Origin: Podarcis muralis
Lineage: Eukaryota
Assembly (NCBI RefSeq): GCF_964188315.1
Contig: NC_135657.1
Location: forward strand, 23,250,001-23,314,000
Length of the DNA: 64,000 nucleotides
Reading direction: 5' to 3'
Positions 5,101 to 50,875 of this stretch are shown in pieces (within the stretch, counting starts at the first letter, position 1; each line of letters opens with the position of its first letter). A program made the translations under genes and the position numbers. The notes under the pieces were generated by a model, which saw only the letters and a program-made list of their open reading frames with translations, was not told the DNA's origin and made no database searches.

Positions 5101-8100
5101 TGTTGACTCAGCAGAAAATCCAATCAAATTCTACTCTCAAGTGAGTGTGCATAGGATTGCAGCCTTTCCTGACCTGGTTATTCTGCTGTCTGTTTAGAAA
5201 AAGGCACCAGCCTCGCATTGCCCTAAATTCCACACAAACCAAGTTACCTCAGGTTGAAAGGCCGAAATAAAGGCTGCATTTGTTTGAACGGCATTGGATA
5301 GGGATTAGTAAAGAAGGCATGCCTGTTTTTTATGCCTCTCATGCATAATCTCTGCACAGGAGCCCATTCCTGCAAATATCTCCCCTTGTACAATGGGATT
5401 TCCTTCCCTTTCCCCAACTCCATCGCCCTAATTTTTTCTGAGGGTTGAGGGGAACCTCAGACAGATTTAGGGTGGAACAGGGGGAATGAGAGGGATATAA
5501 TGTTCCATTGTGCAAAGAGAAATCTTTGTGCTGACAGAGCATTTTAGGTACTGCATGTATAATAGAGTGTATTCAGATTAGATCAGATGTGAAAGTTCAT
5601 CAGGTCTGAACTTTCAAGATCAACTATATGGCTTCAATGGAACGGGATAACCCTCTGTCTTTCTAAACTTGAGCAAAGATCATTTGGCCCTTTAAGATCC
5701 CAGAAGCCATCCTAGAAGAGTTACAAAATCCAATCCTTTCCCCTTTGCTCAGTCCAAATTATAAGTATGAAAGTACTGTAGAACCTTCATTCTCCCCCCC
5801 CCCCGTTAGAAGTGTATGTTAAACAGAAGATAATACTTTATAGGATTGCAGAATCAACACCTCAACAGGTCAGACTACAGCAGAAGAGCTTGAATAAAAT
5901 TGCAAAATACTGAGTTCTTTCAAAAGGTTCAAAAATTGAACCTGAGAACATTTCTAATTCAAATAACTATGCAATGAAACAATGGAGGATGTTGCTGTAT
6001 AAGGAATGTGTATATTGCAAGATTTATTAGTTTAATTTTCAAGAACAGCCCCTTTTATTATGCTTTCAGTGAACAGAAGAATTCAAAACCAACTAGGCAT
6101 TTAAAACTTTGCTCACATATTTTATTTTATGTAATCCTATCTCCACACACTTCCCACACAAATCCACTAACCCTTTTAAAATACAACTTAATGCCATAGC
6201 ATCACAAAGACCAAAAATTCATCTGGCTTTGCCTCAGCAGAAATGTAAAAGCCGAAGTGCAAGATATAAATTCCCTATTTCATTAATCCAGCATGGAAAA
6301 CAATAGCAGAGGCCAAAAATATGCTGGAAGAAATAATGGCTTATCTGAACCTGCACAACTTCCAAAGGTGTAATTTTATAGGGCATGGTGCAAGTCAATA
6401 TGAGAAATAAAAGTTTCAGGACGCCTATTACAAAAAGAATGCTTGCATGCATTCATATGGTTATTATGGGTGAGTTTTTATACTAAAACGTACTGACACA
6501 CAAATAAAACTGGTATGAATATTGAGTTTTTAATTTTTGCCAAGGACTGCAATGTCACATGAAATATCGCCTAACCCATTTCGATCACCTGGGGAAATTC
6601 TATGGATGGCACCACAGAATTTCACAGGGCAGTGACCCAAAAATGGGCATTTTCTGTTTTTGCCCCTGAAGCAGTGTTTCTGTAACTTGGGCCTCCAGTT
6701 GTGGTTGGACTATAATTTCCATCATCCCTGGTAGCTAGGGATGATGGTATTTGTAGTCCAGCAACAGCTGGAGACCCAAATTAGAGAAAAACTGTTATAC
6801 AATGGACTATTTCCCCCTCTGCTGTACATGAAGCAGCAGCCATCAGTTGCTTCAGACATATTGTAAAAATGGAAAGCCTTTTTGCCCAGCTCCCTCTGAT
6901 CCTTAAGACCCTGTTTTCTATGCTTGAATCCCTTAATAATTTTTTTGCTTTGTTTTTCTCTGATATGCTAAAGGTAAAGGTAAAGGGACCCCTGACCATT
7001 AGGTCTGATATGCTACTCCTTGTTAATATACGCTGTTGGTTGGTTTTAGGTTGTATTTTTGTATTAAAGCTATGGTATAGCACTTAGAATTTTATACATG
7101 TTTTGAAATAAAATATACATAATAAAATAAATATGGGGAATGTGCAATCCAGGGTGTGTGTGCATGCACACACAGAATGTGAGACAAATTAATCCCAAAT
7201 GAGCGGGGGATACCTGGCTAGCTGTATGCTTGCAGTCTCTGCTCTTTTTCTTCCCATTCTTTTAGAAGTAATCCCAGACTGACACTTCAGCCCAAATTCA
7301 GGACTGACTGAAGTTAGTTCAAATTCACAAAACCTTCACCAAAAACCACAAACTCTGCTCTTAAATTCTCAGCTTATAATGGCTGGAGCTCCTGAAATGC
7401 ATTCAACCCATAAAAACTATGAGCAGGTGCCAACCCTCAGTACGTTTTATTATAAAGCTTACGACGTCTTTCACATGTTCTTCCTTTTACCTAACTCCTG
7501 CACTTTTTTCCATTCTGTTCCATTTCCAGTCTCTCACTAAGTGGGGTTATGTTCCATTAGGATTATTTTTTATGGAGAGGGAATTGCTCTTGTAACTACT
7601 TGGAGCATGCAAGATGTGGGTGTGGCAAATCATTGAGAGTTATTGTTGAGTCAGAAATGAAATAGCCCAGCATGACTGTAGTTTCCCTGGAAATGTATAA
7701 CTAATTTTAAAAGTTCTAACCCCTAATCGTTGAATACTAAAATGAACTTTCTCCAGCAGAACAATGGCGAGCTTGCTCTGGCAATTCTAATCTAGCCACA
7801 TGCGTTTTCCCTCCATTATTTTCTTTTGAAATGCCATTGTTCATTTCTACCAGCGATTACAGTTAGAGCCCTGCAACAGAAAACAAACATGGCAGAAAGA
7901 ACTCCCTAGAGCCATGTTCAGATTTATGAAACTTTCCTTAAATCTAACTAAGCCCTGGTCCTAATAACACTTGCCTTCAGTTTCAATGTAGGATGAAGAC
8001 ACATGCAATGATTTTTAGAGAAAAGGGGCCCCGCTGGAAACTCTGTCCACAATGCTCGGTCCCAACATACCTTTTCTTCCCCTAGCTGAGGATGGGAGTG

Positions 8101-11100: not shown

Positions 11101-13773
11101 GAGCTGTATCTGTGTGCTGGAAGACACTTTCCTATTCTAAAATATACCTCTTTCATTTCAGAGCAATAGTAAAATCCAACATTGATGAGATGTATTTTTC
11201 CCCCCTATAGAAAAACTTCTCATTTTGACATAAGATGAATATGCAAACAGGTGAAAGTGTGGAAGGAATGCATTGTGAAAACAAAAGCTCAATTCAGATG
11301 AAAACAAGGGAGAAGTGGTAAAACAATGCAGAAAACAGCAATAAAAATGTTTCCTTTCCAAGGAAATGTTCAATAAGCAAAACAACATTGTTAATTTACT
11401 TCGCTTGAATGAAGTCTCCTTCTCAACTCTGCAAGAAGCAGAAACCTTCCTCTTTGGTTGTGAAAAATAAGTTCTGAATCATGTTTATCTGGTGAGATAA
11501 ATTGAGGACCGTAGACCTACAGCTCTGCCTGGTGGTGAATCACATCTGGTTAGGGCAAAATTACAGACTAGGCATTTGCTGCTGAAAACAGCACCCCTTG
11601 GTCTCTCTTACGCAGTAGTGTGTGCTCTCAACTTTATCACATCTTGACATCATTTTACCCCAGCCAATGATTTGGACTTCGGGAATGGGGAGACAAAGCA
11701 GATGTCAAAACAGTGGTCCTACACATTACAAGGGAAACAAGGATGGATCCAACATTGGGATGCCATTGTTGGCTGCAGCCCTATGTCTCTTTCAGCTCCA
11801 TCCTTGCATAAGTCAATTGCCTATGGTTGCACTGATATCACTGGCTTTGTCATGGCTAATATGCATTTAGGACAGCTTATAATTGAGTCCTCCTTAAGTT
11901 AGTCCCAACAGAAACCTCATTTACACTGAAGTCTCCCTATAAAAGTTTTTTTGTGCATGACCGCTATGCTGCCCCAGTGCAATGCTGCCATGAACTGGGA
12001 TGCTGCACCTTTAAACAAGCCTTTGCTTTCAAACCTGTGACCCCTTCATTATTTCACTATCTATGCACCATATTGGTTCACGTTATGGCAAAAATATGGT
12101 TCATGTTTTATGAGACTGGGCGCCTGTTTTCCACCAGATACATTAAATGTGGAGAGGTTAAAGGAAGCATGTATGATAGCACACAAAGCTATAATTGGGT
12201 CAATGTCTGCGTTTGACACCTCCTTTATTATTCAGTAGGTACTAAGCTTTCTATAAACTTACAGTATTTTCTTTGTTCTTTGGTGACAAGTAAGACAAAT
12301 GAAAATAAAGTTTTCTTTAAATAAAATAACACAAAGGGGCTATAGACAGAAATGTGTTTATTGCAAAAGAAACAAACAAACGAAAAAAAGACGACAGAAA
12401 GTGGTTGGAATAATGGCACATTGAACTAAGAATTTAGAAACATCTTACATTCTGCCCTAATGGCAGCACAGTTAATAAGGACAAACGGTCTTCTTGCAGC
12501 TCGCTTCAACTGTAGAGTGTTTCTGCAGACCTGGCGGGCAAGTTTAGTCAAGTATGTCGTATGGAGGAAGAACGACTGGCGTGTCTTCACGGCAGATTTT
12601 GGACTGCCTGTGTTCCGGACTGGTATTCCCTGCGTTGCTTGTCGAGACATGTGTGTTCTAACACATGCTTCCTGTAAGGGGGGGGGGGGGAGAATCAAAA
12701 TGCAAACTAAAAGTCTTACTTCTGAGATCTTCCCTTTCATTAATGTACTGTTTTCTTATATGTGGCTATAATATAAAAATCAAAACCCAGTGCCCGAATT
12801 CACTCTTGCCCTCTCCCCTTACCCAATAACCAACTTTGGAACACAGAAACATGGCTTATTCTGAGTCAGGCCATTGGTCCATCCAGGGGGTAGCACATTG
12901 ACTGGCAATGGCTCTCCAGGATTTCAGACATGGGGCATTTTTGCCCCCATTGGAGATGCTGAGGCCAGAACTTGCTGCATGGAAAGCAATGCTCTTACAC
13001 TGAGTTATGTCCTTCCCCTAACTTTACAAAATCCAAGCTAGGGAAGAATTCCAATCTCCTCTCCCTCCGTCCCCACAAGTGCTCCTCACCTACTGAATTG
13101 CAACACAGTAAACCTTGGGAATCCTACATTTCCCATCAGCCTCCTGGCTCCTCTTCCCTCTCACCATCACTGTTTCTCCCAAATTATCACCACTTGGCAA
13201 GGAAGGAAAGGGAAAGTGGGGGGTTAGAGTTGGCTGGGCAGTGTTTGGGCAGTGAGGAGTGATGAGACAAGGGTCATTTTCCTTAGCACAGGATCAGGTC
13301 AAAAAAATGATCCATGCTTCTTTTCAATTTAATCTGAGATGAACAAGGGAAAACTTGCCCATTTGAGAACGGATTAAGTTCCCATAGTGGGAAAACACCC
13401 GAACACACACTCTACAAAGAACTCCTTTCCAGTCTTCGAAGCACAAACACCTTTTCAAAATGCATTGTATAAAGGTGTGTAATTCATACAATGGTTTCTC
13501 TGACCAGGGTAACCCAAGGTAGTCCAACACAACTTTCCAATTAAACAGGAAATATGGAAAGGAGTTAAATTTCCACAATAAAACACAGTGGATAATGTAA
13601 CAATTAATTGTGAATTATAATTATGAAATTATTCCTAATCATATAATGAAATTTTAAAAATCAGCACTACAGAAGCACATGCAACAGGGAGCAGACCCCA
13701 CTGAACATGATGGGACTTACTCCAAGTAAACGTTAAAAGGACTGGGTTGCACATATTTATTATTATTATTATT

Positions 13774-13808
<35 letters not shown>

Positions 13809-14477
13809 CTACAGTATAATGAAATCCTACCTCTGTGGTTTGAGTAGGAGAAAATCTGTCTTCATTTGTTAGTGTTGGCATTTTCAGGCCACCATATTTC
13901 TTCCAATAAATCCAACACGGTGCACATAACCTGCACTGCATGTTGGGTGGACCCCAAGAATACCACTGATGAGACTGTGTGACTAAAAGAAGAAAATAAA
14001 ATTATGTTGATCCATTCAGCATAAAATACTTATCTGCACACGTAAACACACACACACACACATCTATTTATTATAGATGTATACTGCAACAACAAATGCC
14101 ACACATTTGAATAAGAAGCTTTATATATTTTATTCATTTTAACAGTTTGAAAATTCAGGGCATTCACCGAATTCTCAGAGCGACACAACTGCTTATTCAC
14201 TAAGATAAACTTAGCTAAGGGGGCCCACCAGGGACACCATAAACCACCCATTTCTATTGCTTGCCAGTCTGTGCAAAAACGGGGGGTGTTGTAAACACCT
14301 GGTAAACCTCAATATTCAGCTGTTTAGGTTGGTGGTATGCAATCATGCAGGCTTGCTAAAAGAAAAGCACTGATGTTAGTATAGAATTTATGTAAGCACT
14401 ACTCCAGAGCCCTACATGCATGATGCTCTCATGTGAGTACACACGGAGCTATTTAATTGCTTAACATCATGGCATGA

Positions 14478-18191: not shown

Positions 18192-21100
18192 TGTGTCACT
18201 GTCGAGTTGTGTGTGAGATCATCACACATGATAATCTGATCTATGGCTACGTGCCAATCCTCACTCAGATGTGTCTTCCATGTGGGTATTTTGACATGTT
18301 TAAAGCCTCCCTAAATTAGATTACCACTGAGATTTAGCTTTCTAAATCCCATTTTCTGGAATCTATACAATATCTGTTTACTGGGCAATCCTCCTGGGTT
18401 GGGGCAGAGAGAACCAAACGTAATCACACTGCAAAATCCAAAGCCCTTTTGAGACCACAATGGGGCAGGCAGGGGGGGGGGGGTTCTGGGTCATTACCCC
18501 CCGACCCAACCTGTTTCTTGTATTGCTTCCATTGGAAACAATTGAAGGAATATGGCATAAGAGATCCTCAAGGTGAATGGAAGCCACTCCTGCCACACAC
18601 ACCCCTTGCCAACCAGAGAAAGGCAAGAGCTTCAGTGAGAAGGGGCCCTGTGAGGTCAGATCTCCTTCTCCCAGAGCAGACCACTCTCAGAGAGAGGTCC
18701 AAAAGCAACCCAGGTGCTACAGAACTTCACGTTCATTTACTTGGCCAACCCAGGGCAAAGTATAAAAAAATTACCTGCTGGATGTATCTGTCTGTAGTTT
18801 TCCACATATAATAATATTCAATGATGCTAGTCAGAGACTTCCAAGGAAGCTGAAAAACGAAACGAAAACAAAAATACTTAATTACAATGTCTGGTAAACT
18901 TCACATTTTAACTGCAATGTTGCAGCAAACTCAGCACGATGTAATTTAGACCCAGGAAAAAAGACTTTTTATAAATCTCACTGCAATTTAGAGGTCAAGG
19001 AAGCATAGTCTACGTTAGCAAAGGTAATAAGAGGGGTGGGCTCGCAATATGTTGTTGTTGTTTTTTGACTACAACTTCCATAATCCCTGACCACCGGTCT
19101 TGCTGGTTGGGGGCTGATAGGAGCTGAAGTCTAACAACATTTGGAGGCCCAGAGGTTTGCCACCCGTAATAAAATTACCTGCTTCTCTCTGGGAAATGGG
19201 TAAGGAAACACACTCAAGAGTTTGGTTAGACAAATTCTGGTGGCTTAGGATCTGGGAAAGTCACTGGGCTTTTGTACTAGTCCTTAGAGCAGGGGTCAGC
19301 AAACTTTTTCAGCAGGGGGCCGTTCCACTGTCCCTCAGACCTTGTGGGGGGCCGGACTATTATTTTTTTTTTGGGGGGGGGGAATGAACGAATTCCTATG
19401 TCCCACAAATAACCCAGAGATTCACTTTATGTAAAATTCATTCATGTAAAATGTGGGCCTTAGTTTGCCTACCCATGCCTTAGAGTAGCGGTTCTCAACC
19501 TGTGGGTCCCCAGATGTTGTTGGACTACAACTCCCATCATCCCTGAGCTCTGGCCTTGCTAGCTAGGGGTGATGGGAGTTGTAGTTCAACAACATCTGGG
19601 GACCCACAGGTTGAGAAAGGCCTTAAATATTCCATTAAAATCTATTTAAGAAATAATTAAAATCTTAAGAAGACATGGATTCTTCTATTAAGGACCTTTT
19701 CAAATGCTGGCATCAGTTTGATACTTTTAAGTTTGTTTGTGTTGCCACTGTTTATAAATTGTACTGTCTGGGGTTGGGGTTTTTTAGTCTCCATGGGTAG
19801 GAGAAGAGGACTAGGAACAAGGGACTCAAAGACCCTCAGAGTCCGTTCTAGCCCTACAACTCTATGTTTCTATGAAGCTGCCTTATATCAAGTCAAACCA
19901 TTGTTCCTTTGAACTCAGTATTTTCAAGGCTGACTCTCCAGGTTTTTGGCTGTCTTATCTGGTGATGCTACGGATTGAAACTCAGACCTTTTGCATGCAT
20001 GCTATGGACTCTACCACTGCACCGTGAACCTTTGAGACAAAGCAACACAGTGCTTTCATTAAGTGTTTTGTTTTTTAAAAAGTGAGGGCTAGCCAGTAAA
20101 AATACTGTTAGCTTTCTACATGTCAGCTTCCTATATTATGAAGAAATCTTGGCACAAGTTGTTTTCAAGTTCGCACGCCTCCAGGAGAGAGGTATTACAA
20201 ACCTTACCTCCATCCCGTTTGTTCTACTCCAAGCCCTAAGTGTTACAAAAGTGATGGAACCCTTCTGCACTGAGCTTTTCACACATCGACACACAGTTAG
20301 TAGGAAGAGTGTGCCAAAATGAATCAGCTGTATGCCACTGTGGATCAACCCTCTTCCCTAAGAAGCAGGCATTCTGTTATCAAATGATTACTTAATGTCA
20401 CAACAGAATTAATTCGCAAGATCAGAGAAGCCAGAGGGGCAGCGATGGCAACTGCAGATGACATACCGAGCAAGACAGCATATCCTCAAAAACAGCACAT
20501 AGTTTTCATGAACTGATATATCATTACTTTAATTATTCTAGTTTTTGGTCCCTACCGGTAACACTGCATCTTAGCAGATAGCTAGTATTTACTTGTGCCA
20601 CATTAGCAGCAGGTCTTTGTACTTCCAGAGTTCTTTCAACTGCTCAGTAGGGTCAACCTCGGATAAAACAGCATGCTTTTTTTTATCTTGGTGCCTTGAA
20701 GATAAGATGTGTATATTCCAAACCTTTATTTTAATCCGGCAGGGATTAAATCACTTAAACTATAAAAATGATACATAAGATGAAACAGAGTACAATTTTT
20801 TTTTTTAAGTGGCGGACTTCTTTATTCCATGTTTAGAGAACTTTGTGGAGATCTCTGACCTTTCCAAGGTTGCAAACTATGTTCTTGAAGCTGACTTTGG
20901 GAACAACCCAAACTCAAGATCTGCAGGGATGAGCAAAGTCTGGAATAAGAGGATCTCTGTCTAAGCCAACTGAGGACCCTCAGCCCAGTTCAGTAGGAAA
21001 CAGGTAAAGGTAAAGGGACCCCTGGCCATTAGGTCCAGTTGCGGACGACTCTGGGGTTGCGGCGCTCATCTCGCTTTATTGGCCGAGGGAGCCGGCGTAC

Positions 21101-21280
21101 AGCTTCCGGGTCATGCGGCCAGCATGACTAAGCCGCTTCTGGAGAACCAGAGCAGCGCACAGAAACACCGTTTACCTATTTGTTTATTTGTTTTCTTAGT
21201 AAAGTTTCATGAGCCCACACCAGTATTAAGAAGAATTCAGAAAGACTTCACCTCATGTCCCATTCCAAACCACAAAAGAA

Positions 21281-21326
<46 letters not shown>

Positions 21327-24300
21327 TAGCCTAGATTCAGGTAGGTAGCTCTGTTTGTCTGACGCACTCAAAATATATTAAAAAATTGTCCAGTAGCACC
21401 TTAGTAAAGGTAAAGGGACCCCTGACCATTAGGTCCAGTCGTGACCGACTCTGGGGTTGCAGCGCTCATCTCGCTCAACTGGCCGAGGGAGCCGGCGCAC
21501 AGCTTCCGGGTCATGTGGCCAGCATGGCTAAGCCACTTCTGGCAAACCAGAGCTGCACATGGAAATGGCGTTTACCTTCCCGCCAGAGCGGTACCTATTT
21601 ATCTACTTTCACTTTGATGTGCTTTCGAACTGCTAGGTTGGCAGGAGCAGGGACCGAGCAACGGGAGCTCACCCTGTCGTGGGGATTTGAACCGCTGACC
21701 TTCTGATCAGCAAGTCCTAGGCTCTGTGGTTTAACCCACAGCAGTTGGAAATACAAGGGCATAAATACACCAACCTGACTCAGCTGGTGATGGCTAAGCT
21801 GAGTCAACGCCTAAAACAGGGGTGGAATAGTGAAGGAGGAGACATACCCCTATTCCAAACTCTGTTTGGACCTAACAATCCAGCAGAAGTTACACTGTCA
21901 AAAAGGGCAATGTAAGAAAAACTCTAGTTTTGAAGGCTTGGGCTGGCTCAGCAGGAAGCAGCTCTGTTCCGGAACAGAGTTTGGAATAGAGTAAGTTACA
22001 CCAGCATGCTTTACCCTATACTTTGGATTCTTTCCACCTTTGTTCTATTTCAACCGTGTTAACAACATCCATCAGTGTTTAAAATTGGGAACACAGAATG
22101 AACTTCATTAATATGTAAACACGGTTCATTGGACTTCAAGCTCTCGTGCCATTTATGTACCTTTTCAAACGGAAAAAAACTGCAAACACTTTCAAATCTA
22201 AACTTCTTTTCTTTTGCAAACTGCTAAAATTTTGTTTACCTCCAATTTGTGATAGTATTAGAGAATAATTTGACTCCTTCTATCAGGCTGAGAATGAGCC
22301 CTGCACACCCTCAGGGGCGTCTCCTTCTCCCCCTCCTTGTGCTCCTAGTGTTGGCCTGACTGGCTAAATTACAGCATCTTAAATTAGGATACTGCAGTTT
22401 AAATGCAGCTTGCAAGCTATGATACAAAACCTCTGATTTAATGGCAATCCTAGCAGCTACGATTAGGCAAACAGGTGCCAATTATTTTTTTAAGAACAGC
22501 CATTATTGTTAAATGATGCCACGAAGGGGGGGAAAGAGCACTCAGGTGCTTTTCGCTCAGTGAACTGTCTACATCAGGCATATTATTTACACTCCACATA
22601 TAAAGATGCCTTATAAAAGGCCAGTCCACTTGCCCAGTATTGTTTATTCTGCCTGATAGCAGCTCTCCAAGGTCTCCAGGCAGAGGACCTCACCAGCACT
22701 GCCACCTTTTTAATGCAGACTTAACAGGCTTTGAGCTGGGACCATTTGCATGCTCTACTACTGAAGTATGGGCCTTCCTCTGATATTTACATGCACACGT
22801 ATGGACTACTTGTAACCAAGGGAAGATGCCTGGGTGCCAGAATGGTGCCTGACATCTCCACCATCTGGAGCTGCATGCCTGGGGATCACTAGATCTGGAC
22901 TGTTTTCACACGCTAATACCTCATCCTGTAGAATTCTATCGGCTATATTTTATCTGCATAATCAGATAATGCAGGAACCAAAATGCTTTTTCTGTGCAGC
23001 CTGAGCAGGAGCAGGGAACAACGTCATAGTTGTTGCTTGTCTTCACTTAGCCCACCCCACTGCCCTGCTCACAGTTGTGAAGGATAGTCTTACGTTATGA
23101 ATGGTCCATGTCACCCTTAAGAAAAAGAGGTAGGACTAGTCCAATATATGTGTGTACTATCCCTGGATCAAGTGACTTTTCTTCTTTAAGTTCTCAAACT
23201 TCTTAACTTAGTTCAAGGTTGTCATCTGAACTAGCTGGATGTTTAACTGGATAATCAAACCTGTCACTCCATCATTTGAAAAATAGGGCTCTAAAGCCAT
23301 CTTGCCCAAGAATGGCAACTAGACAGTCTGTTTTGGCAACTGCCACCTTGGTTTAAGGAGCCATTTGGTGCCTAGCTTATACAACTGAGTTTCTAACACC
23401 AAAATCGAGCTGTCTGTGGAAAACAACTCAATGAGGGATAGAAAGGGGGTATACTTCTACTTACAAAGTCTTGTCGTATGTCGTTGAAGTCTTTGCCGTA
23501 TTTCTCTAGGGCTTCTTCAAACAAACTAGCCTCTGAAGCGGACCATTCTTCCATTTCATCTCTGCAAAGGACAGGCCCTCCAAGTGGAACCAGGACACTA
23601 ATAGCACTGCTCAGGTCATAGTTATGCTTATGCAATGTATCCATGGCATGAAACTGGACAAAAAACACAAAAGCAACCCACTAAATTCAATGGGCTCCAC
23701 AATTCTCTACATGCTAATTGCAGTAAACAAGAGCTGAGAACCCTCTCTCTTCTGTTGCGCTCTTCCCATGATACAGATTTTAATTCAACTGCAGTTTCTG
23801 CTTTCTGTTACCCTCATGCTTCCCTTTCTTGACTATGAAAATAGGCAAGAAACAGTGCAGTTAAGTGAGCAAACCTGAGTCTTGTAAGACCTGTTCAGAA
23901 GACCATCCAAGGTAGAGAAAAAAGCATCAAAGGTAGAGCAATACAATGAGACATGGTGGAGGGGAATGGGATCACGTTCGCACATCCCAAACACCCATGC
24001 ATCAATTGGGTCTTGTTTACAGCCTTTTGTGGGCACATATGCCTGCAGAGTCTGCACAGAGCACCTAATCTGTGTGGGTTTAGGACAAGTCAGTGTGATC
24101 CTATTTACCCCTTCGTGTGTTGATTAATCCTGAATTTTTATTGTCTGTACAATGCTGTAGAAACCTCCAGGAGAGTTCCTTAAACCTACGACTTAGTCCC
24201 ATCTTAAGGGAGGATGCCCGAAGCATGCAACGCATTTTAGAAATAATTTGAAAAGGGCATTAGGAACGAGGGAGGAACACAGAATTGTATGAAGCTGCCT

Positions 24301-30300: not shown

Positions 30301-33300
30301 CTTGTTGTGTTGCAATACTAGAACTTGCTCATCTGAACAAAGCTTTGCGTAGACTCTCCTTACTCAGGGCTGTACAACTTCTGGAAAGAAAAGTCAAGAA
30401 CAAAAATAGAGGCAGTAATTTGGGAAGCCCAAATAATAAAAAAGAGAGACAGTTGGAGCATAGGCAGCAAATTGTCAGTGCAAATGCAGCCTGAGATATT
30501 TGTTGTTCTTTGTCCCACATCTACCACACTTGCGCCTTTAAAAAAAGAAGAATAAAAGCAAGAGGCCAGATTCTAACTTGTTTGTGTTTCATTATCGCAT
30601 TTCCCCACACTGAGGTTTTTTGGTTCTGTTTTCTTTAAGGTAGAGAAAACACCAACATCGGTAATAATAAGCACTGCTTGCTCCAAAGGATGAGTTCCTG
30701 ATCCGAAGAACATTTCTTCTCTGAAATAATGCTGCCGACTAGAGTTGATAATATATCCAATATGTCACATTCTCACTGTCTGATGGCTGCAAGTCCCTTG
30801 GGTCAATTCCCAGCTGTAATTATCTGTGAGCTGTTGACACGGAGGGTCTGCGGCTTGGTGTTTTTAGTTAAAGAAAATCTTAATTGGCCCATAGAATGTT
30901 TTTGTCAGCGGTATTGAAGAGACAGACTGCTCCACCCCTAAGCAGGATCCTTGGTGGAATGGGGCACAGCTTTAATACCAAGTCAAGCGCTGGAAAAGGC
31001 GATGGCTTCCTACTGTTAGAAAATACTGAGCAGCCAATATTGTGCTGCCATACAAAGCTGCGGTTGATAAAGCAGGGGTTGTCTCTTTGTCTGACCCTGA
31101 AGAGTCTCCCCTCTTGCATCTGATAATGCTTCTTGCATGACCAGAAGGATAGAGCGAGATGTGAGGGTGTGTGTAGAAACTAGCCCATTGTATAAATGTC
31201 ATATTCACATTCATTGCTTCAGCCATTTTTTATCTCTAGTTCCATCAATTACTTGCATGTGGCCTGCTTGAGGTTGTCCAGGAGGAATGCGGTCCTCGGG
31301 ATTTCTCTCCCCAGTGTCTAGCCTCCAACATGGAGGTCACACGTGGCACAGGCAATGGAGTTCTCCTAGACAGGAGACGAGACTGCCTATATAGTCTTGG
31401 CTTGACCATGCTGAGGTGTCCTATCCTATCCAGCTCATCAGCCTAAAGACAAAGCCACTTCAAGGCACTCCTCTTGTGGAATGGCATTATTCCCTGGTCA
31501 AATCATGCACAAGAGTGGAAGATGCATGGTGGTATCTTTCAAGGGGTTTTTTGCATCAATTGCAGGGATGTAATGGTTAGGGCAGGGACGCGGGTGGCGC
31601 TGTGGTCTAAACCACTGTGCCGCTTGGTTCTTTACCTTTACTTTTTTACCTGTCTAAAGCAGGACACACACGGGCCTCCTAAGCATGAGACCACTATTAT
31701 GGTAACAGTACAGTATGTGGAAATAATTCACAATGGCAAGTCCTCAGAAAGTCATTCTCTGTGCAGGAGCTTTGACAAAGCCCAGGAGAAACACAGTCTT
31801 TGGTGAGCAAGAATTCAGTGGCTGGGGCAGATCAATAGCTGCATTTTTAAAGACTGACTAATTTTCTTTTTGGAAAAAGAAATCAAAATTGTGCTGACTG
31901 AGCTACAAATCAGGAAGTGTCCAACTGGAATCTCACCTCTGTCATTAAATCACAAGGTGGCCTTAGGCAAGCAAAACAAACACAAATAATACTTAATATA
32001 CTGAGTGCATTGTTTACTTTTCTTCTGATTCACTGCACAAAGGAAAATTACTAAAACTGATGGAGCCATATTGGTTTCTTCCACATTTTTCAGCACAGTG
32101 GGAGTGCAACCACAAAGTTACAAAAAAAGACAATTATTTATTGGAAATTAAGTTCTCCTACACTACAAATACAACAGTATATCTACTTCCAATTCAATCT
32201 CAGGAAACAGCAAGAGAAAACTGTTGGCAGGGGAGAATCTCTTTCAAATAACTTGCTAAAGAATATTTTGTGGCAATGCTGAGGCCAAAAGAAAAAAGAA
32301 AGAAATTATAAGAACCAGAACTTCTCACGCTGAAGACTCTTCCATGTAGCATGTTGGAAATAAATGTATTTTTTTTAAAAAAAAACAGAAATGAATAAAG
32401 GGAGAGGGGCTTTATTTGCACTAGTCGAAACATTCAACTTGAGATTTTCCAATGAGGGCAGATAGAACAGAAAGGTCTACTGAGACAATCAGGGCTTAAA
32501 AGCTCATATAAGAGTCAAGTCAGAGTAAATGATAAGATTTTTCTTCTTCGTAAAATATACACACTGGTGGAGGAAGAGGAGTGCGGGGGGGAGTGCACCG
32601 CCCCCGGCAGTGCGATCCCAGTGGAGTGCCATCGCGGCTGTCCCCCCAACAGCGCTGGGCGCCACACCCCTGCAGATGGCATGCCCCACCCTCAGGACAC
32701 ACACCAGCCCCGCCCCCACCTGCTCTCCGCCCCACCCCACCCCCATGCCGGAGCATGAAGCTCCGCCACTGAATACACACACACACACGACTACCTCTTA
32801 ACCCCATACTGATTGTGGAAAACTTAAGATTGTAGGTAAGCAGAGAAATGAAATAAAAGAGAGAAAACAGAGAATTCGCTTCTCTTTCAGGAAAAGCAAC
32901 TTCTGTAATTGTAAGTTCTTTAATCTGTTTTAGTATTGTGCGATGCTATGTTACATCATTAATGTTGTGCTTTCATTGTTGTAATCCTGCCATGGGATCT
33001 CAGCATGAAGGGCAGGTAATAAATTTTAACAACAACAACAGGGTCTGGGGAGGCACTGAGTGGTATACTTGCTGCAACATCTGTAGCTCTGCTGGATAGG
33101 CTGGGAGATGCAGAAACTCCCCTCCCAAGGTCAGAAGGCAGGGAAACAAGCACCTTAGGGGGACCTAGGCAGCTTTGGGTTCAAAGCCTCTGGCACCCTC
33201 CCCATGCCTTCTGCCAGTTACCGCTTTGTTTCATCTTCTGCATGACAATTCTTCATATATTTAAAGGGTGCCAGCGAGTCTACCTTCATTCTTCTCTTCT

Positions 33301-36300: not shown

Positions 36301-39300
36301 ATGACAGCAACATCGCCCTGCACATTTGAAATGTGTCTAAAAGTATAAACTTGCATCTCCCAATGATCCAGGACTATGATGCATCGACTAATGTGTTTTC
36401 TATATATAGTCAAGAAAAGAGAAGAAGCAAAGGCGGGAGGGAGCAGAGTGACGCAGCCGCAAGTGGAGAAACAGAGCAGAAGTGAGCGTTGCATCTGTTA
36501 TTTGTCAGGAATCCTATGTGTTCCTGCGCACGTGTGCTTGGGAGTAAGCTACACCGAACTCGGTTAGACTTACTTCTAAGTAAGCATGCACAGGAAGTCT
36601 TAAGAGGGTGGAGTGTGGCAATGGATGAAAAAAGCATGGAGGAACTTAGTGAAGACTAGAGCAGGAAGGTATGGATCACAGAGATGCAACAGTCTCTGGT
36701 AGGGCTGGCTGATATATCAATATATCATCTAAAACCAGCTTGAAGTCCATGTTGTGATATCAGTTTCATAATTTTTGACCTGGCAATATATCACAAATCA
36801 TGATGTGTGTGTGTGTGTGTGTGCGCGCGCACACACACACACAATGGCACCATCCTAAGATGTCAGAACTGAGTTCCTGTGAGTTCCCCTTGAAAAAAGC
36901 CTTGTGGTGATATAACGGAATAACATGATGTTTAGCTGGTAATCTATCGAAATGTTGAAACCCAGGTATCACACAGCCCTAGTCTCTGGTCCCAATTAGT
37001 CAGGACAGCAAAAACCTCTTCATTAGACCAGAAGTTTCCACTTATCGTGAGGAACAGCAGTCTTCCTTAATTCACAATCTTGCAAATGTAACAGCTCATG
37101 CACATTTTTAATAGCCTCCCTGCATACATAAACTCTCACAATGCAATCCTATTCTTGTCCACTCAGAACTAAGTCCTGTTAATTTCAACAGAACTTTCCT
37201 CCATATTAAAAAGGGTGTTTTGTTTTGTTTTTAATTTAAAGACTATCTTTTTGTTTGCTTGCACTCCCTCCCTCCCTTTGATGAAAAAGGAGAGATTGGT
37301 GGGATGAGGGCCCCTTCTGTAGGGGTGGGGGTGGAGGGGAGAAGATTTAGCTGGCTGACTTATGCTGAAATGGGAGGTTGGGTACTTTCCCAGGAAAGTA
37401 GAAGTAAGTTTAGTTGGACTCAGTGGGGCTTATGCACGCACAGATTCCACAGGCCTCTGAGTGGGAAAGCAGATGCACCTTGACAAGTAAATCACTTAGA
37501 CTACTCATAAATTAGTTGAAAATATATTAAATATAATATATGGAAGTTTATTTAATACAGTGGTACCTCGGGTAAAGAACTTAATTCGTTCTGGAGGTCT
37601 GTTCTTAACCTGAAACTGTTCTTAACCCGAAGCACCACTTTAGCTAATGGGGTCTCCTGCTACCGCCATGCCGCCGCTGCACGATTTCTGTTCTCATCCT
37701 GGAGCAAAGTTCTTAACCCGAGGTACTATTTCTGGGTTAGCGGAGTTTGTAACCTGAAGCGTATGTGACCCGAGGTACCACTGTACTTTATTACATCTAC
37801 CACTTCCTTATATTTTAAGGCCCTCCACCATTGCAGGGAGGTACGGTGGGATCCTCTAATGCTTTGGGGGGGGGGCACAGCAAGGCGCTCCCCCACCGCA
37901 GATATATGTTGTGATATTTAGCTGGTTATATACTGTGATGTTGAAAACCAGATATCGCCCAGCCCTGCTCCCAGGTAGGCAGATTTAGGATTGCAGACTG
38001 CCTGGCTTAAAAGCAAACTACAGTATTAATGTTGGCATAACTTCTCTTCTTGGTCGCTGAAAAGTATTCTTATGTGCCACTGATTTACAAGCTTGTATGG
38101 AGCAATGGGCTGTACCCAACATGACTCTTACTCAGAGAAGACCCACTAAAAAAAAAGGGGGTAGAATATATTGCTCATGGCCATTGACTTCAACGGGTCT
38201 ACTTGAGCATATTGCCAACCACATGTGCCCTAGGCCACCTCTCTCATAAGAAAAACAGTGTATTCGTTCTTCAAATATATGTTAAAAGAAGAAATGAAAG
38301 GGTCTTGTGCCATAAATCACAGAGGATGTTACTATGTAATAAAGGTCTTACTGAATTTATTTAAAAGTCAATTGCATCTGAGAGATAAGCAAGCAGTTGT
38401 TTTCACCATGTCTCATGACCAGGAACTGTTTTATAGCAAGAACTCCATCAAATGGACTAGGTGCTATAAATAAAACATTTTTTCCCTTTGATGCTTAAGG
38501 TTATTTATAAAGAGCAGGTCAGTTACACAGTTTGCAAAAAACCTTTAAAAAAAGACATGGAAGTCTTGTTTGTTCATAAAGCTGTCACATTACTTCTTGA
38601 TACACTGACATGCATTCCACAGAAGTTGTGTCAATTCACACTGATTTCATTTCTCCTGGGTGAAGGCAATTCTGAATGGAGACCTAACAGCAGCTACTAA
38701 GTCAAGGTAGGGAAACTCCTCAGTTGGTGAATTACACTGTAGTCCTCACTACGATCCATGGAAAGTGCACTGACATGTTTCCAATGGTAGCTGTAGTTTG
38801 GGATGAAGGGGTGCAAAAGCAAGGGTGTGAATGAGCCAGGCTCCTATAGCCACATCCCCAAGACTGCCACTTCCAGACAAGATTCACACCTCGGATCTGC
38901 CTGCTACTGGCTGTATTTTGAAGATTAAATCGCAACAACAGGAAACAGCTTATTTGACGTATGTTTGTTATGGCCACTTTTTATAATTCATAATATCCAC
39001 AAAGACTGAAATGTCATCATCATCATCATCATCATATTCTGACAAATAGGGAATGGCTGTCTCCATCTTTCCTAATGAGGCACCCAACATCCACAACCCT
39101 TTATCCAAGCCACTGCCACCATTTTGTGACAGCAAGGGATAGAGGTAATTCTACTTCTCCTGGATTGGCCTCAACATTCATGGGCATGGACCAAGCTTGG
39201 ACAACTGAATCTCAGCTTAATAAGCAACATATGAATGGGTCTTTTGGTTGTGCATGCAGCCTCGGCACTCCTCCCCTTGTGTGACCAAGTAAACAAACCA

Positions 39301-42300: not shown

Positions 42301-45181
42301 CTTGGTTTTTGAACCATTTCAGGAGTCAAACAGACTCCCAGAACAGATTAAATTAGAGAACTAGGGTACCACTGTACTGTACAGTGGATGCTCGAGTTGC
42401 GAATGTGATCCATGCGGGATGCACGTTCGCAACCCGCAGTGGTGCGTCTGCACACACGTGGCTTTCAATTCGGCGCTTCTGCACATGCGCGGCCACCAAA
42501 ACCCAGAAGTAACCCATTCCAGTACTTCCAGGTTTCGGCGGGTGCATAACCTGAAAAAATGCAACCTGAAGCGGCTGTAACCTGAGGTATGACTGTAATG
42601 GGTTAAGATCTGGTGAAGTACAATAACAGCTTTGTAAAGTATACAGTTTGGGATTTTATTCCCCTCCCCCCTTTACTTTCCCTTCTACATGGGTGCTGTT
42701 TCTTTTTATATCTCTCTTTTATTTACATCTCCTCATGTTTAGTGCACATATAATTATGTACTTTTTAAGTTTCAATAAAGATGTCTGCGGGGAAATGAGC
42801 ACAAAACGCCGCCAGGTCTAGTGGATCATGGCTGAAGCATGTGTGTGCATGTTCAAAGCCGAAACAAGCGAAGAATTCACATTGTCAAAGTGCTGAGTCA
42901 TTTTTTTCCCTGGCCACCACTGCAAGAAGCAGTAAAAAGAACTATTAGGTGGGTAACAGGGTGGCCATGTGGCACCAGTATGGTTAAAACAAGAGACTGC
43001 AAAAACTCCAAAAGGTCCTCTGCAAATTGAAGGAATGGACAGTAAAATGGCAAATGTGATTCAATGCAAGCAACTGTAAAGTGTTGCATGTAAGGAGCAA
43101 AAAAATATTAATTTCACATATATACTCATGGGGTCTGAACTGGAGGTGGCAAGCCAGGAGCAAGACCCTGGGGTCATAGCAGATAGCCTGATGATGGTGT
43201 TAGCCCAGTGTGTTGTGGTCATGAAAGAGGACAATTCTATGCTAGGGATCATTAGGAAAGGAATTGAAAACAAAACTCCCCAATATCATAATGGCATTAC
43301 AGTGGTACCTCGGGTTACATACACTTCAGGTTACATATACTTCAGGTTACAGACTCCGTTAACTCAGAAATAGTACCTCGGGTTAAGAACTTTGCTTCAG
43401 GATGAGAACAGAAATCATGCTCCGGCCCCATTAGCTAAAGTGGTGCTTCAGGTTAAGAACTGTTTCAGGTTAAGAACGGACCTCTGGAACGAATTAAGTA
43501 CTTAACCCAAGGTACCACTGTATACAAATCTATAATTTGGGAGTACTGTGTACAATTCTGGTTGCCTCACCTCAAAAAGGATATTGTTGAGTTGGAAAGG
43601 GTTCAGAAAAGGGAAGCCAAAAATGATTGATGGGATGGAGGAACGTTCCTCTGCGAAGGAGCGCTGCAGTGTTGGGGACTTGTTAGTTTGCAGAAAAAGC
43701 AAGTAAGAGGCATCATGACAGAAGTTTGCAAATGTATGCATGACGTGGATAGAGAAAAGTTTTTATCCCTCTCTCATGACCCAAAACTTGTGGACGGCCA
43801 ATGAAACTAACTGTTAGACGATTTGGGACAGATGAAAGAAAGCACTTCTTCACACAAAGCAGAGTCACAAGTATGGAACTTGCTCCCCCCAGGAGGCAGT
43901 TATGGCCACCAACTTGGATGGCATTAAAAGAAGATTGCACAGTTTCAAGGAGGAGAAAGCTACCAACCATGATGGTTATGCTCTCTACCTCCACAGTTGG
44001 AGGCAAGCAAGGCTTCCAAATGCCAGCTGCTGGGAACTACAGGAGGAAAGAGAGATCTTGTGCTCATGTTCTGCTCGCTGGTTTCCCACAGACATCTGGT
44101 GGGCCACTGTGAGAACAGGATGCTAGACCAGATGGGCCATTGGCCTGATCCAACAGGCTATTCTTATGTAAATGTGAAAAACAGCTTCTTGGGAGTATGG
44201 CTTACAGCACTTGAAAGAGGAGAAGTCAAAAGAAGAGCTCTCAAACGGACTTACAAAACTACAGCGCTGAGATTTTTAGATTTCCTGTCTCTCTGCTTAC
44301 ATCATTATCATTCCAAATAAGTGACTCCCTACTAGTTTTTCGGGCTTGTTGCTGACCAGATGTTGTCGTCTGGCCTACGGGATTTTTAGAATGTCTTTAT
44401 TATTATTCAAGGGAATAACATCTGCAGTGCTTAGCCGCTCCAAAAATTCTTTCAGTGTCTTCTTTTGATTCAGTTATTGTTACTGTTATGAAACTTCACT
44501 AGCAATCTAAAAGTGAATGCCCATTTGTAAGTGGATTTTGTTCAACAAAACACTGCTGTTTCAGATCTAATTTCAATGCCAAGTGATGCATTGATAATCT
44601 ATTTAAAATATAAATCCAGGGTTGTACTCTTACTCTTGGAAAATTTCAATAAGACTATATTCAAATGATTAAAGGTGGCTGGGAAGAGGAGATCGCCTAT
44701 TGCAAACATTAAATAAATCTATTAAAAACACTGGAATATTGACAAATTTCTCCCATTCATCAGGTGTCTTGATAATTAGAAGACATCAGAAATAATGTTC
44801 ACTGGAGATGTACAGCAAAATATATACCACTCAATTATTATTTTCAGAATAACTTTCATATATTTATATCACACCATTTTTTTCCAAGGCAGCTCACAAC
44901 AGATTTATAAAGCAAATGCAAGATTACAAAGTTCATACTGTAGAAAAGGGAATCACACAACTATGGGGGGGGGGGGGGGTCACCATCGAAAAGGCCCTGG
45001 AAGTATTAATATTAGCAGCAACTTTAAACAAGCAAACAAAACCCTGTTGTACAAGCTTGGGTAGCTACCTTTTTTGACCCGAGGGCTTCATTCACCCTTC
45101 ACTATCTCCCAGGTGCCACGTGCCAATAGTGGGTGTGACCAAACTGGATAAGTCTCACCCCATACTCTCTCATATGCACAC

Positions 45182-50824: not shown

Positions 50825-50875
<51 letters not shown>

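What the first reader, a model, noticed from the sequence alone, without database searches (positions are those of the whole stretch)
21003..21742. SINE-templated intragenic duplication: 570 bp of intron 4 copied 29.5 kb away into a second SINE
Seen in sequence: 21174-21742 is a direct copy of 50717-51291, with roughly 15 differences by eye, many of them CpG decay in the 21-kb copy. The copy includes about 150 bp of unique flank, a (CA)n tract, half of a PLE-derived element and a Sauria SINE. It joins a different SINE 3' end (21003-21177, with other diagnostic bases: tttattgg/gcgtac/catgact versus tcaactgg/gcgcac/catggct) at a 4-bp microhomology ACCT. The whole composite is flanked by a degenerate 12-bp direct repeat, CAGTAGGAAACA (20991-21002) / CAGTTGGAAATA (21742-21753). 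Inference, two models: (a) one retrotransposition event with a template switch from a SINE RNA onto MTA3 pre-mRNA, which is same-sense and locally tethered; or (b) a break in a resident SINE repaired by invading the 51-kb SINE, copying past its tail and rejoining by microhomology. A T7 run about 20 nt past the donor SINE tail argues against simple Pol III read-through transduction. Either way, SINEs are acting to move unique sequence.
Basis: partly seen in the sequence, partly recalled or inferred. Interest (0 to 1): 0.75.

Follow-up and report, generated by a model that had tools for sequence, protein, structure and literature searches.

The report
SINE patched from neighbouring SINE, flank captured
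A 570-base piece of one intron of a lizard MTA-family gene (a jumping-gene copy plus 230 bases beside it) was copied 29.5 kb away into a second copy of the same jumping-gene family, most likely when a DNA break was repaired using the neighbour as template; this is a clear example of a known kind of repair-made duplication, not a new mechanism.

Summary
Window 21174-21742 is a direct copy of 50717-51291, with 15 substitutions and one 6-bp (CA)n indel. It joins the 3' half of a different Sauria SINE (21003-21177) at a 4-nt overlap. The whole composite lies between 12-nt direct repeats that match at 10 of 12 positions.

The host gene is an MTA-family gene on the minus strand, and all three SINE pieces are in its sense orientation. 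The 51-kb locus is the donor, because its nested insertions with their own target duplications are intact there.

An ordinary, slightly 5'-truncated resident SINE was broken. Its head end invaded the SINE 29.5 kb away, copied that SINE's remainder and ran on 230 bp into its flank. The new strand rejoined the other broken end at ACCT.

The main argument is that the copy ends exactly where SINE-to-SINE homology ends. A reverse-transcriptase jump onto pre-mRNA would give that by chance at roughly 10^-3. Weaker support comes from the degenerate target duplication and the lopsided CpG decay.

It fits the published class of repair-mediated duplications. The scan reported a similar case before on other DNA of this genome (s1-184756).

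Reads and orthologues could not be checked, so this verdict is inference.

The parts
20991..21002 (-). 3' direct repeat (target-site duplication) of the acceptor SINE. Sense strand reads TGTTTCCTACTG.
   Evidence: Matches 21742-21753 at 10/12.
21003..21177 (-). SINE piece B: the 3' 172-175 nt of a Sauria SINE, ending in (ACCTTT)2ACC. Read here as the tail half of the resident (acceptor) SINE.
   Evidence: 88% identity to the donor SINE; subfamily bases differ from A/A' at alignment columns 212, 218, 246, 304-307 and 322.
21174..21177 (.). Junction overlap ACCT, shared by SINE B and the donor flank (50717-50720). On the gene-sense strand it reads AGGT.
21178..21405 (-). Captured non-SINE flank of the donor. 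It holds two-copy sequence, (CA)n at 21285-21324, and a copy of the left half of the donor's host element (21337-21405) with that element's target repeat (21322-21336).
21406..21618 (-). SINE A', the part shown to be copied from the 51-kb SINE. It shares that copy's private and subfamily bases (columns 154, 212, 218, 246, 304-307, 322 of alignment A2).
21619..21742 (-). SINE head segment, SINE positions 15 to about 138. No marker tells whether it is the resident SINE's own head or copied from A. It differs from A at 5 sites (21675-21709), and in all five the 21-kb base is a CpG-decay change from the inferred ancestral CpG (at 21675 A has changed as well).
21742..21753 (-). 5' direct repeat of the acceptor SINE. 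Sense strand reads TATTTCCAACTG, with TTT at -12 to -10 upstream.
   Evidence: The signature is as described for Podarcis muralis Sauria SINEs in PMC13295347.
50717..51291 (-). Donor tract.
50954..51305 (-). Donor Sauria SINE A, full length, with a 4-bp TTAG target repeat at 50950-50953 and 51306-51309.
50886..51369 (.). Short inserted element that hosts SINE A, flanked by a perfect 15-bp repeat ACAATTAGCCTAGAT (50871-50885 and 51370-51384). This nesting shows the 51-kb locus is the original.
50928..50934 (-). T7 run on the SINE sense strand, 18 nt past the tail of SINE A (a Pol III terminator-like run). It is T6 plus A in the copy (21380-21385).

Best explanation
This is a repair-made duplication primed by SINE-to-SINE homology.

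Step 1 (shown by anatomy): a Sauria SINE, here called R, inserted by the usual Bov-B route at about 21 kb. It lacked its first 14 nt and made a 12-nt target duplication.

Step 2 (inferred): R later suffered a break, or a stalled fork, near SINE position 183-196.

Step 3 (inferred): the head-side 3' end paired with SINE A, which lies 29.5 kb away in the same orientation. DNA synthesis copied the rest of A. It then failed to hand back within the SINE and ran 230 bp into A's downstream flank.

Step 4 (inferred): the displaced strand was joined to the tail-side end of R at a 4-nt microhomology (ACCT). This left R's tail half (B) as a second partial SINE. The donor stayed unchanged.

A replication-based template switch (MMBIR-type) gives the same product and is included in this explanation.
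For: (1) The copied tract ends at SINE position 15, directly next to the target repeat. That is where homology between two SINEs ends, as expected if copying was started by SINE-SINE pairing.

(2) P. muralis has 77,228 Sauria SINEs in 1511 Mb (PMC13295347). At that density, a random intron piece ending within 30 nt of a sense SINE's 5' end has probability of about 8e-4. A donor drawn at random from all copies would lie within 30 kb with probability of about 4e-5. So both homology and cis-proximity acted.

(3) The outer edges are an ordinary Sauria SINE insertion: an (ACCTTT)n tail, a 12-nt repeat starting with T, and TTT at -12 to -10.

(4) The repeat has 2 mismatches in 12. That has P of 0.009-0.04 if it were as young as the duplication, and is easier to explain if R is older.

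(5) Since the copies split, CpG decay is 8 sites in the 21-kb copy against 1-2 in the donor (binomial p 0.04-0.11). Five of the 8 lie in the marker-free head (5 of 7 CpGs there against 3 of 18 elsewhere; Fisher p 0.017, change-point permutation p 0.10). If the head is R's own, older sequence, the asymmetry largely disappears (3 against 1).

(6) A 4-nt microhomology with no poly-A, inside an interrupted transposable element with a linked single-copy donor, matches the published hallmarks of repair-mediated duplications (PMC2671141).

(7) An earlier follow-up in this genome reported the same kind of event with an inverted donor SINE (s1-184756). I did not check that claim.
Against: There is no positive marker of a resident head: 21619-21742 has no non-CpG difference from A.

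Piece B looks no older than the copied part. B has about 4 of 18 CpGs decayed and about 1 other private change; the copied part has 3 of 15. So R would have been patched fairly soon after it inserted, or the counts are too small to tell.

The head's CpG decay (5 of 7) is also higher than B's (4 of 18; p 0.06), which either model leaves partly unexplained.

Ordinary strand annealing should have used the roughly 160 nt of 88% homology rather than 4 nt, so an extra assumption is needed (heteroduplex rejection, or loss of that end).

At 29.5 kb the donor lies outside the <5 kb class that Pace et al. treat as confidently repair-made.

The arrangement (donor upstream, everything sense to the gene) and the AGGT overlap are coincidences under this model, at about 1/8 and 2%.

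No orthologue or read evidence could be obtained.
Confidence: 0.68

Rival explanations
1. One retrotransposition event with a template switch. The Bov-B reverse transcriptase started on a SINE RNA (B) at the 21-kb target. After 172 nt it jumped at AGGT/ACCT onto nascent MTA-gene pre-mRNA tethered nearby. It copied 570 nt of intron, including SINE A, and the cDNA was joined to the target 14 nt short of A's 5' end.
For: A single 12-nt repeat with the Bov-B signature flanks the whole composite. The 3' end is an intact SINE tail. Both parts are in the same sense. The gene is on the minus strand, so the pre-mRNA carries A and its flank in sense, and the donor is upstream of the target. B and the copied part look about equally old. 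Chimeric retrocopies made by template switching are well documented for L1 (10.1101/2025.02.02.635956), and one was reported by the scan in this genome (s1-152556; I did not check it).
Against: Nothing in this model makes the copy contain a SINE, or stop at that SINE's 5' end. The chance is about 4% given the entry point, and about 8e-4 overall at the genome's SINE density. The entry point is inside an intron, not at an RNA 3' end, unlike the common U6/L1-type chimeras. The target repeat has 2 mismatches in 12 although the copy is only 1.2-2.6% diverged (P 0.009-0.04). The CpG decay is lopsided, 8 against 1-2.
Confidence: 0.12
2. Read-through transcript of SINE A as template. Pol III started at A, ran past its tail into the flank, and this RNA was picked up by template switching from SINE B RNA during insertion (a SINE 3' transduction variant).
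For: It would explain why the copy begins close to A's own 5' end (position 15 of the SINE).
Against: The transcript would have to pass a T7 run 18 nt after the tail and a T4 run further on. The junction is not at a T run. Re-insertion 29.5 kb from the source in a 1.5-Gb genome is unexplained for a free RNA.
Confidence: 0.03
3. RNA-bridged repair. A rare, cryptically spliced MTA pre-mRNA joined the intron sequence just downstream of SINE A (exon-like end ...AG, intron GT...) to an AG|GT inside the resident SINE 29.5 kb downstream. This RNA, or its cDNA, templated repair of a break in the resident SINE, with the far end resolved through SINE-SINE homology.
For: The 4-nt overlap read on the gene-sense strand is AGGT, so the junction is compatible with removal of a GT...AG intron. 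Random junctions with a 4-nt overlap show this in 2.05% of cases. The donor is upstream, the acceptor downstream, and both are sense in one transcription unit, a chance of about 1/8 under plain DNA repair. Like the best explanation, it accounts for the copy ending at the SINE head.
Against: Both putative splice sites are weak by eye: GTGGTC at the donor, and no pyrimidine tract with A at -3 at the acceptor. It needs three rare steps. No RNA data could be examined. The GT-AG fit was noticed after the fact.
Confidence: 0.05
4. Assembly artefact: the 21-kb composite is a chimeric or misplaced piece of the 51-kb locus.
For: Read support could not be checked. A 145-N run lies 0.9 kb from the donor (49640-49784).
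Against: The copies differ at 15 sites, mostly CpG transitions, plus a microsatellite length change. That is the pattern of two loci that have evolved apart, not of a duplicated read. Both junctions are clean and lie within 740 bp. The outer edges carry a proper target duplication.
Confidence: 0.03

Closest known systems
Repair-mediated duplications (capture of proximal chromosomal DNA by SDSA; Pace, Sen, Batzer & Feschotte 2009, PMC2671141)
   Same: A transposable element is interrupted by a copy of linked, otherwise single-copy DNA. The size is within range (up to 619 bp for proximal cases, a mean of 302 bp for distant ones). There is a microhomology junction, no poly-A, and the donor is unchanged.
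   Different: Here one side of the copy was primed by about 90% homology between two dispersed SINEs rather than by microhomology, so part of the 'insert' is itself SINE. The donor is 29.5 kb away, outside their confident <5 kb class. No squamate was in their survey.
Coupled homologous and non-homologous break repair, and long-tract or aberrant SDSA (Richardson & Jasin 2000; Drosophila gap-repair work). Cited from my own knowledge; the titles only appeared in reference lists.
   Same: Invasion and synthesis by homology on one side, with an end-joining finish on the other and extra copied sequence in between.
   Different: Those are experimental events at induced breaks. This is a fixed or reference germline event between natural repeats.
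Non-allelic gene conversion between neighbouring SINEs (Alu; PMC8230782)
   Same: A nearby family member is used as the template to overwrite part of a SINE, with a proximity effect.
   Different: Ordinary conversion stays inside the homology. Here synthesis overshot by 230 bp and duplicated unique flank and half a SINE.
Template-switch chimeric retrocopies (U6/L1 and related; 10.1101/2025.02.02.635956; PMC2104539)
   Same: Two same-sense parts, a 3' part that is a 5'-truncated retroelement with an intact tail, and one target duplication around the whole.
   Different: The 5' part here is intron DNA entered at an internal point. It ends exactly at the limit of SINE homology. The target repeat is more decayed than the copy.
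Earlier scan case s1-184756 (TMCO6 intron 2, same genome)
   Same: It was reported as an older SINE patched from a second SINE, with the repair running about 50 bases past that SINE's end.
   Different: The donor there was inverted and 2.6 kb away, with a shorter overshoot. I did not re-examine that locus.

Membership tests
Bov-B-mobilised Sauria SINE insertion (outer edges of the composite) | tRNA-related head and Bov-B-type 3' region ending in (ACCTTT)n | tested here: met
   Alignment A2 with two other copies in the window. The tail is ...CCCTTTACCTTTACC. The repeat unit is as in Table 4 of PMC13295347. ARAGORN calls no tRNA in the window, as expected for a degenerate tRNA-like head.
Bov-B-mobilised Sauria SINE insertion (outer edges of the composite) | Target-site duplication of about 12 nt whose first base is T, with TTT about 10 nt upstream (Tn-TA signature) | tested here: met
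   The 5' repeat is TATTTCCAACTG with TTT at -12 to -10. The two repeats match at only 10/12. The control SINE at 47843-48205 has a perfect 13-nt TAACATTAGAAGA.
Repair-mediated duplication (Pace et al. 2009) | A transposable element interrupted by sequence present at only one other place in the genome | tested here: inconclusive
   The flank has two copies in the 64-kb window. Genome-wide copy number could not be tested.
Repair-mediated duplication (Pace et al. 2009) | Donor closely linked on the same chromosome (their confident class is <5 kb) | tested here: not met
   The donor is in cis but 29.5 kb away. That falls in their '>5 kb' group, which they did not classify with confidence.
Repair-mediated duplication (Pace et al. 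2009) | Breakpoints with microhomology, deletion or filler, and no poly-A/T tail | tested here: met
   There is a 4-nt ACCT overlap, no filler and no poly-A at the inner junction. The other boundary lies within SINE homology.
Repair-mediated duplication (Pace et al. 2009) | Uninterrupted acceptor element in an outgroup or other allele | not testable with these tools
Protein-based look-ups of flanking ORFs were blank. No relatives were found in the scan index.
Template-switch chimeric retrocopy | One target duplication and an endonuclease signature around two same-sense RNA-derived parts, the 3' part being a 5'-truncated retroelement | tested here: met
   The resident-SINE model explains these features equally well.
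Template-switch chimeric retrocopy | The 5' part is a copy of a discrete RNA, typically entered at that RNA's 3' end, with limits unrelated to homology with the 3' part | tested here: not met
   The entry point is inside an intron with no RNA end or T run. The 5' limit coincides with the end of SINE homology.
SINE 3' transduction by Pol III read-through | Flank copied up to the first effective downstream terminator | tested here: not met
   The T7 run at 18 nt and a later T4 run lie inside the copied flank, and the copy ends at no T run.

The most novel reading that the evidence does not exclude
The patch was templated not by the distant DNA but by a cryptically spliced MTA pre-mRNA (or its cDNA) that bridged the broken resident SINE. 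On this reading the AGGT junction is a splice scar, and the locus would be a natural germline record of transcript-templated break repair in a vertebrate.
Probability: 0.05. Interest if true: 0.8.

Novelty: new member of a known kind. Interest (0 to 1): 0.3.

Why it matters
The locus is a cleanly resolved example of abundant SINEs acting as landing pads for ectopic repair over tens of kilobases. P. muralis has about 77,000 Sauria SINEs. Such repair can overshoot and duplicate unique intron sequence. This extends repair-mediated duplication, previously catalogued in mammals, chicken and zebrafish, to a squamate and to a homology-primed form. Together with the earlier TMCO6 case it suggests the process recurs in this genome, so a genome-wide count would be worthwhile. 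No functional consequence is evident. The copied flank holds no recognisable RNA gene or exon and sits in an intron.

Tried and rejected

Fetching orthologous contigs through ORFs beside or across the junctions: the word search with the right-flank ORF found nothing. Exact look-up of seven ORFs found none in the collection. The scan index held no look-alike stretches. These blanks say nothing about other species.

Only two single exons were scanned, by reference.

Rfam scans of both loci gave only far sub-threshold hits: SCARNA7 at 20-23 bits against a cut-off of 65, lying over the microsatellite. I rejected these as chance.

ARAGORN found no tRNA-like gene.

Rejected readings:
- A retrocopy inserted into a pre-existing truncated SINE B. 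B alone has no flanking repeat; the repeat flanks the whole composite.
- Copying in the 21-kb to 51-kb direction. The nested insertions with intact target repeats exist only at 51 kb.
- Strand-specific editing as the cause of the excess changes. C-to-T and G-to-A both occur, and all are at CpG.
- A molecular-clock ordering of B against the copied part. The counts are too small.

Scans of the metagenome, bacterial and viral collections were not attempted, because they cannot be expected to hold lizard DNA.


Full report
**1. What is there**

Reading both loci and aligning them confirms that 21174-21742 is a direct copy of 50717-51291. There are 15 substitutions (2.6%) and one 6-bp difference in the (CA)n tract.

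A repeat search of the whole window finds these as the only long direct repeat pair of this kind. A BLAST of the donor SINE against the window finds three substantial Sauria SINE pieces besides the donor:
- the copy at 21406-21742, 97% identical;
- a 172-nt 3' fragment at 21006-21177, 88% identical;
- an independent full copy on the other strand at 47843-48205, 90% identical.

The non-SINE part of the copied tract occurs only twice in the window. The window has one N run (49640-49784), which I left untouched.

**2. Orientation and host gene**

Two minus-strand open stretches carry a GATA zinc finger (13720-14001, PF00320, E 9e-9) and the MTA R1 domain (12429-12755, PF17226, E 4.5e-24). In MTA proteins the GATA finger precedes R1, so the gene runs from high to low coordinates.

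I did not determine which paralogue it is, nor the intron numbers.

All three SINE pieces at 21 kb and 51 kb are on the minus strand, so they are sense to the gene, and the donor lies upstream of the acceptor.

**3. Which locus is the original**

At 51 kb a short element (50886-51369) is flanked by a perfect 15-bp repeat (50871-50885 and 51370-51384). SINE A (50954-51305) sits inside it, with a TTAG repeat of its own.

The 21-kb copy contains only the left half of that element and lacks SINE A's first 14 nt. So the 51-kb locus is the donor. The Penelope-like origin proposed for the host element was not tested.

**4. Anatomy on the SINE sense strand**

In 5' to 3' order:
- target repeat TATTTCCAACTG;
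- SINE A' from position 15 to its (ACCTTT)n tail;
- 228 nt of A's downstream flank;
- the overlap AGGT;
- SINE B from about position 183 to its tail;
- target repeat TGTTTCCTACTG.

The outer edges match the insertion signature published for P. muralis Sauria SINEs: repeats of about 12 nt beginning with T, and TTT about 10 nt upstream (PMC13295347). Here TTT is at -12 to -10. The control SINE at 48 kb has a perfect 13-nt repeat that also starts TA.

**5. How much of A' is demonstrably copied from A**

In the four-way alignment (coordinates), A and A' share bases that B and the 48-kb copy lack, from column 154 (window 21618) to the tail.

Upstream of that, 21619-21742, A equals the family consensus as far as the outgroup shows. 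No marker there says whether this head was copied from A or belongs to a resident SINE. The five A/A' differences in that head are all at ancestral CpG sites, and in each the 21-kb base is a CpG-decay change (at 21675 the donor has changed too).

**6. Choosing between the models**

*The decisive point.* The copied tract ends at SINE position 15, directly against the target repeat. That is exactly where homology between two SINEs ends. If copying was started by a broken resident SINE pairing with SINE A, this is automatic.

If reverse transcriptase jumped onto pre-mRNA, neither the presence of a SINE in the copied piece nor the stop at its 5' end is expected. The genome has 77,228 SINEs in 1511 Mb, about one sense copy per 39 kb. 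The chance that a random piece ends within 30 nt of a sense SINE's 5' end is therefore about 8e-4. Even given the entry point it is about 4%.

The same density means a donor picked at random would lie within 30 kb with probability of about 4e-5. So a cis-proximity effect acted, as is typical of repair-mediated duplications.

*Read-through from SINE A.* A Pol III read-through transcript of A would explain the 5' end. But it must pass a T7 run and a T4 run, and then re-insert next door.

*Weaker pointers in the same direction.*
- The target repeat has 2 mismatches in 12. P is 0.009-0.04 if it is as young as the copy.
- CpG decay since the split is 8 sites in the 21-kb copy against 1-2 in the donor (p 0.04-0.11).
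- Five of those eight are crowded in the marker-free head (Fisher p 0.017; change-point permutation p 0.10).
If that head is the resident SINE's own, older sequence, the asymmetry falls to 3 against 1.

*Against the repair model.*
- There is no positive resident marker in the head.
- B does not look older than the copied part.
- A 4-nt join was used instead of about 160 nt of 88% homology.
- The donor is further away than the confident class of Pace et al..

**7. Mechanism proposed**

Shown: the anatomy, the donor direction, the microhomology and the ordinary SINE insertion edges.

Inferred:
- a break or fork collapse in the resident SINE near position 183-196;
- invasion of SINE A by the head-side 3' end, which is the SINE sense strand, so synthesis proceeds towards A's tail and on into its downstream flank, as observed;
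- correction of the heteroduplex towards A;
- a 230-bp overshoot;
- microhomology-mediated rejoining at ACCT.

This is homology-initiated, end-joining-terminated repair. Its product belongs to the class of repair-mediated duplications (PMC2671141).

**8. A point noticed in passing**

On the gene-sense strand the overlap is AGGT. The junction could therefore also be written as removal of a GT...AG intron from a transcript running from the donor to the resident SINE. Random 4-nt-overlap junctions in this window are GT-AG compatible in 2.05% of cases.

Together with the upstream, sense arrangement, this keeps alive a low-probability reading in which a cryptically spliced pre-mRNA bridged the break. 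Both sites look weak, and the fit was noticed after the fact.

**9. Age (rough inference)**

Pairwise divergence is 2.6%, or 1.2% at non-CpG sites. The rate implied by Table 2 of PMC13295347 (9.7% corresponds to 61 My) gives about 4-8 My.

**10. Limits**

Attempts to reach orthologous contigs through ORFs failed, and the scan index had no relatives. As a result, assembly support, polymorphism, the ancestral state and the genome-wide copy number of the flank are all untested.

Rfam found nothing credible in either locus.

**11. Earlier scan notes**

s1-184756 describes a similar SINE-patched-from-SINE event with flank capture elsewhere in this genome, and s1-152556 describes a template-switch chimera. 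I used them as leads only and did not test them.

**12. Verdict**

It is most likely (about 0.68) a SINE-homology-primed repair duplication: a new member of a known kind, of modest interest.

Noticed in passing
21174-21177 / 50717-50720: On the gene-sense strand the junction overlap reads AGGT, so the join is compatible with GT...AG intron removal between the donor and the resident SINE. Chance expectation is 2.05% for junctions with a 4-nt overlap. Both putative splice sites look weak.
   Followed up: partly
21544-21709 versus 51093-51258: CpG decay since the duplication is lopsided: 8 sites in the 21-kb copy against 1-2 in the donor. Five lie within 35 bp of the SINE head (21675-21709). The repair model explains this only partly.
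   Followed up: partly
50950-50953 / 51306-51309: The donor SINE A has only a 4-bp TTAG target repeat, much shorter than the roughly 12 nt typical for this family.
   Followed up: no
47843-48205: An independent plus-strand Sauria SINE with a perfect 13-nt target repeat TAACATTAGAAGA. It has a 10-nt internal insertion relative to the other copies (near 48094-48103).
   Followed up: partly
49640-49784: A run of 145 N lies 0.9 kb from the donor tract. I left it as it is.
   Followed up: no
6976-7005 and 31584-31621: Two isolated Sauria SINE scraps: a 30-bp tail piece 100% identical to SINE A's tail, and a 38-bp head piece.
   Followed up: no
43297-43426, 54045-54174, 37554-37773 / 54074-54293: Another dispersed repeat family, with direct and inverted copies 91-92% alike, unrelated to the finding.
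   Followed up: no
21275-21437 and 50827-50986 (minus strand): A sub-threshold Rfam SCARNA7 match (20-23 bits against a cut-off of 65) lies over the (TG)n tract in both copies. I take it to be a microsatellite artefact.
   Followed up: yes
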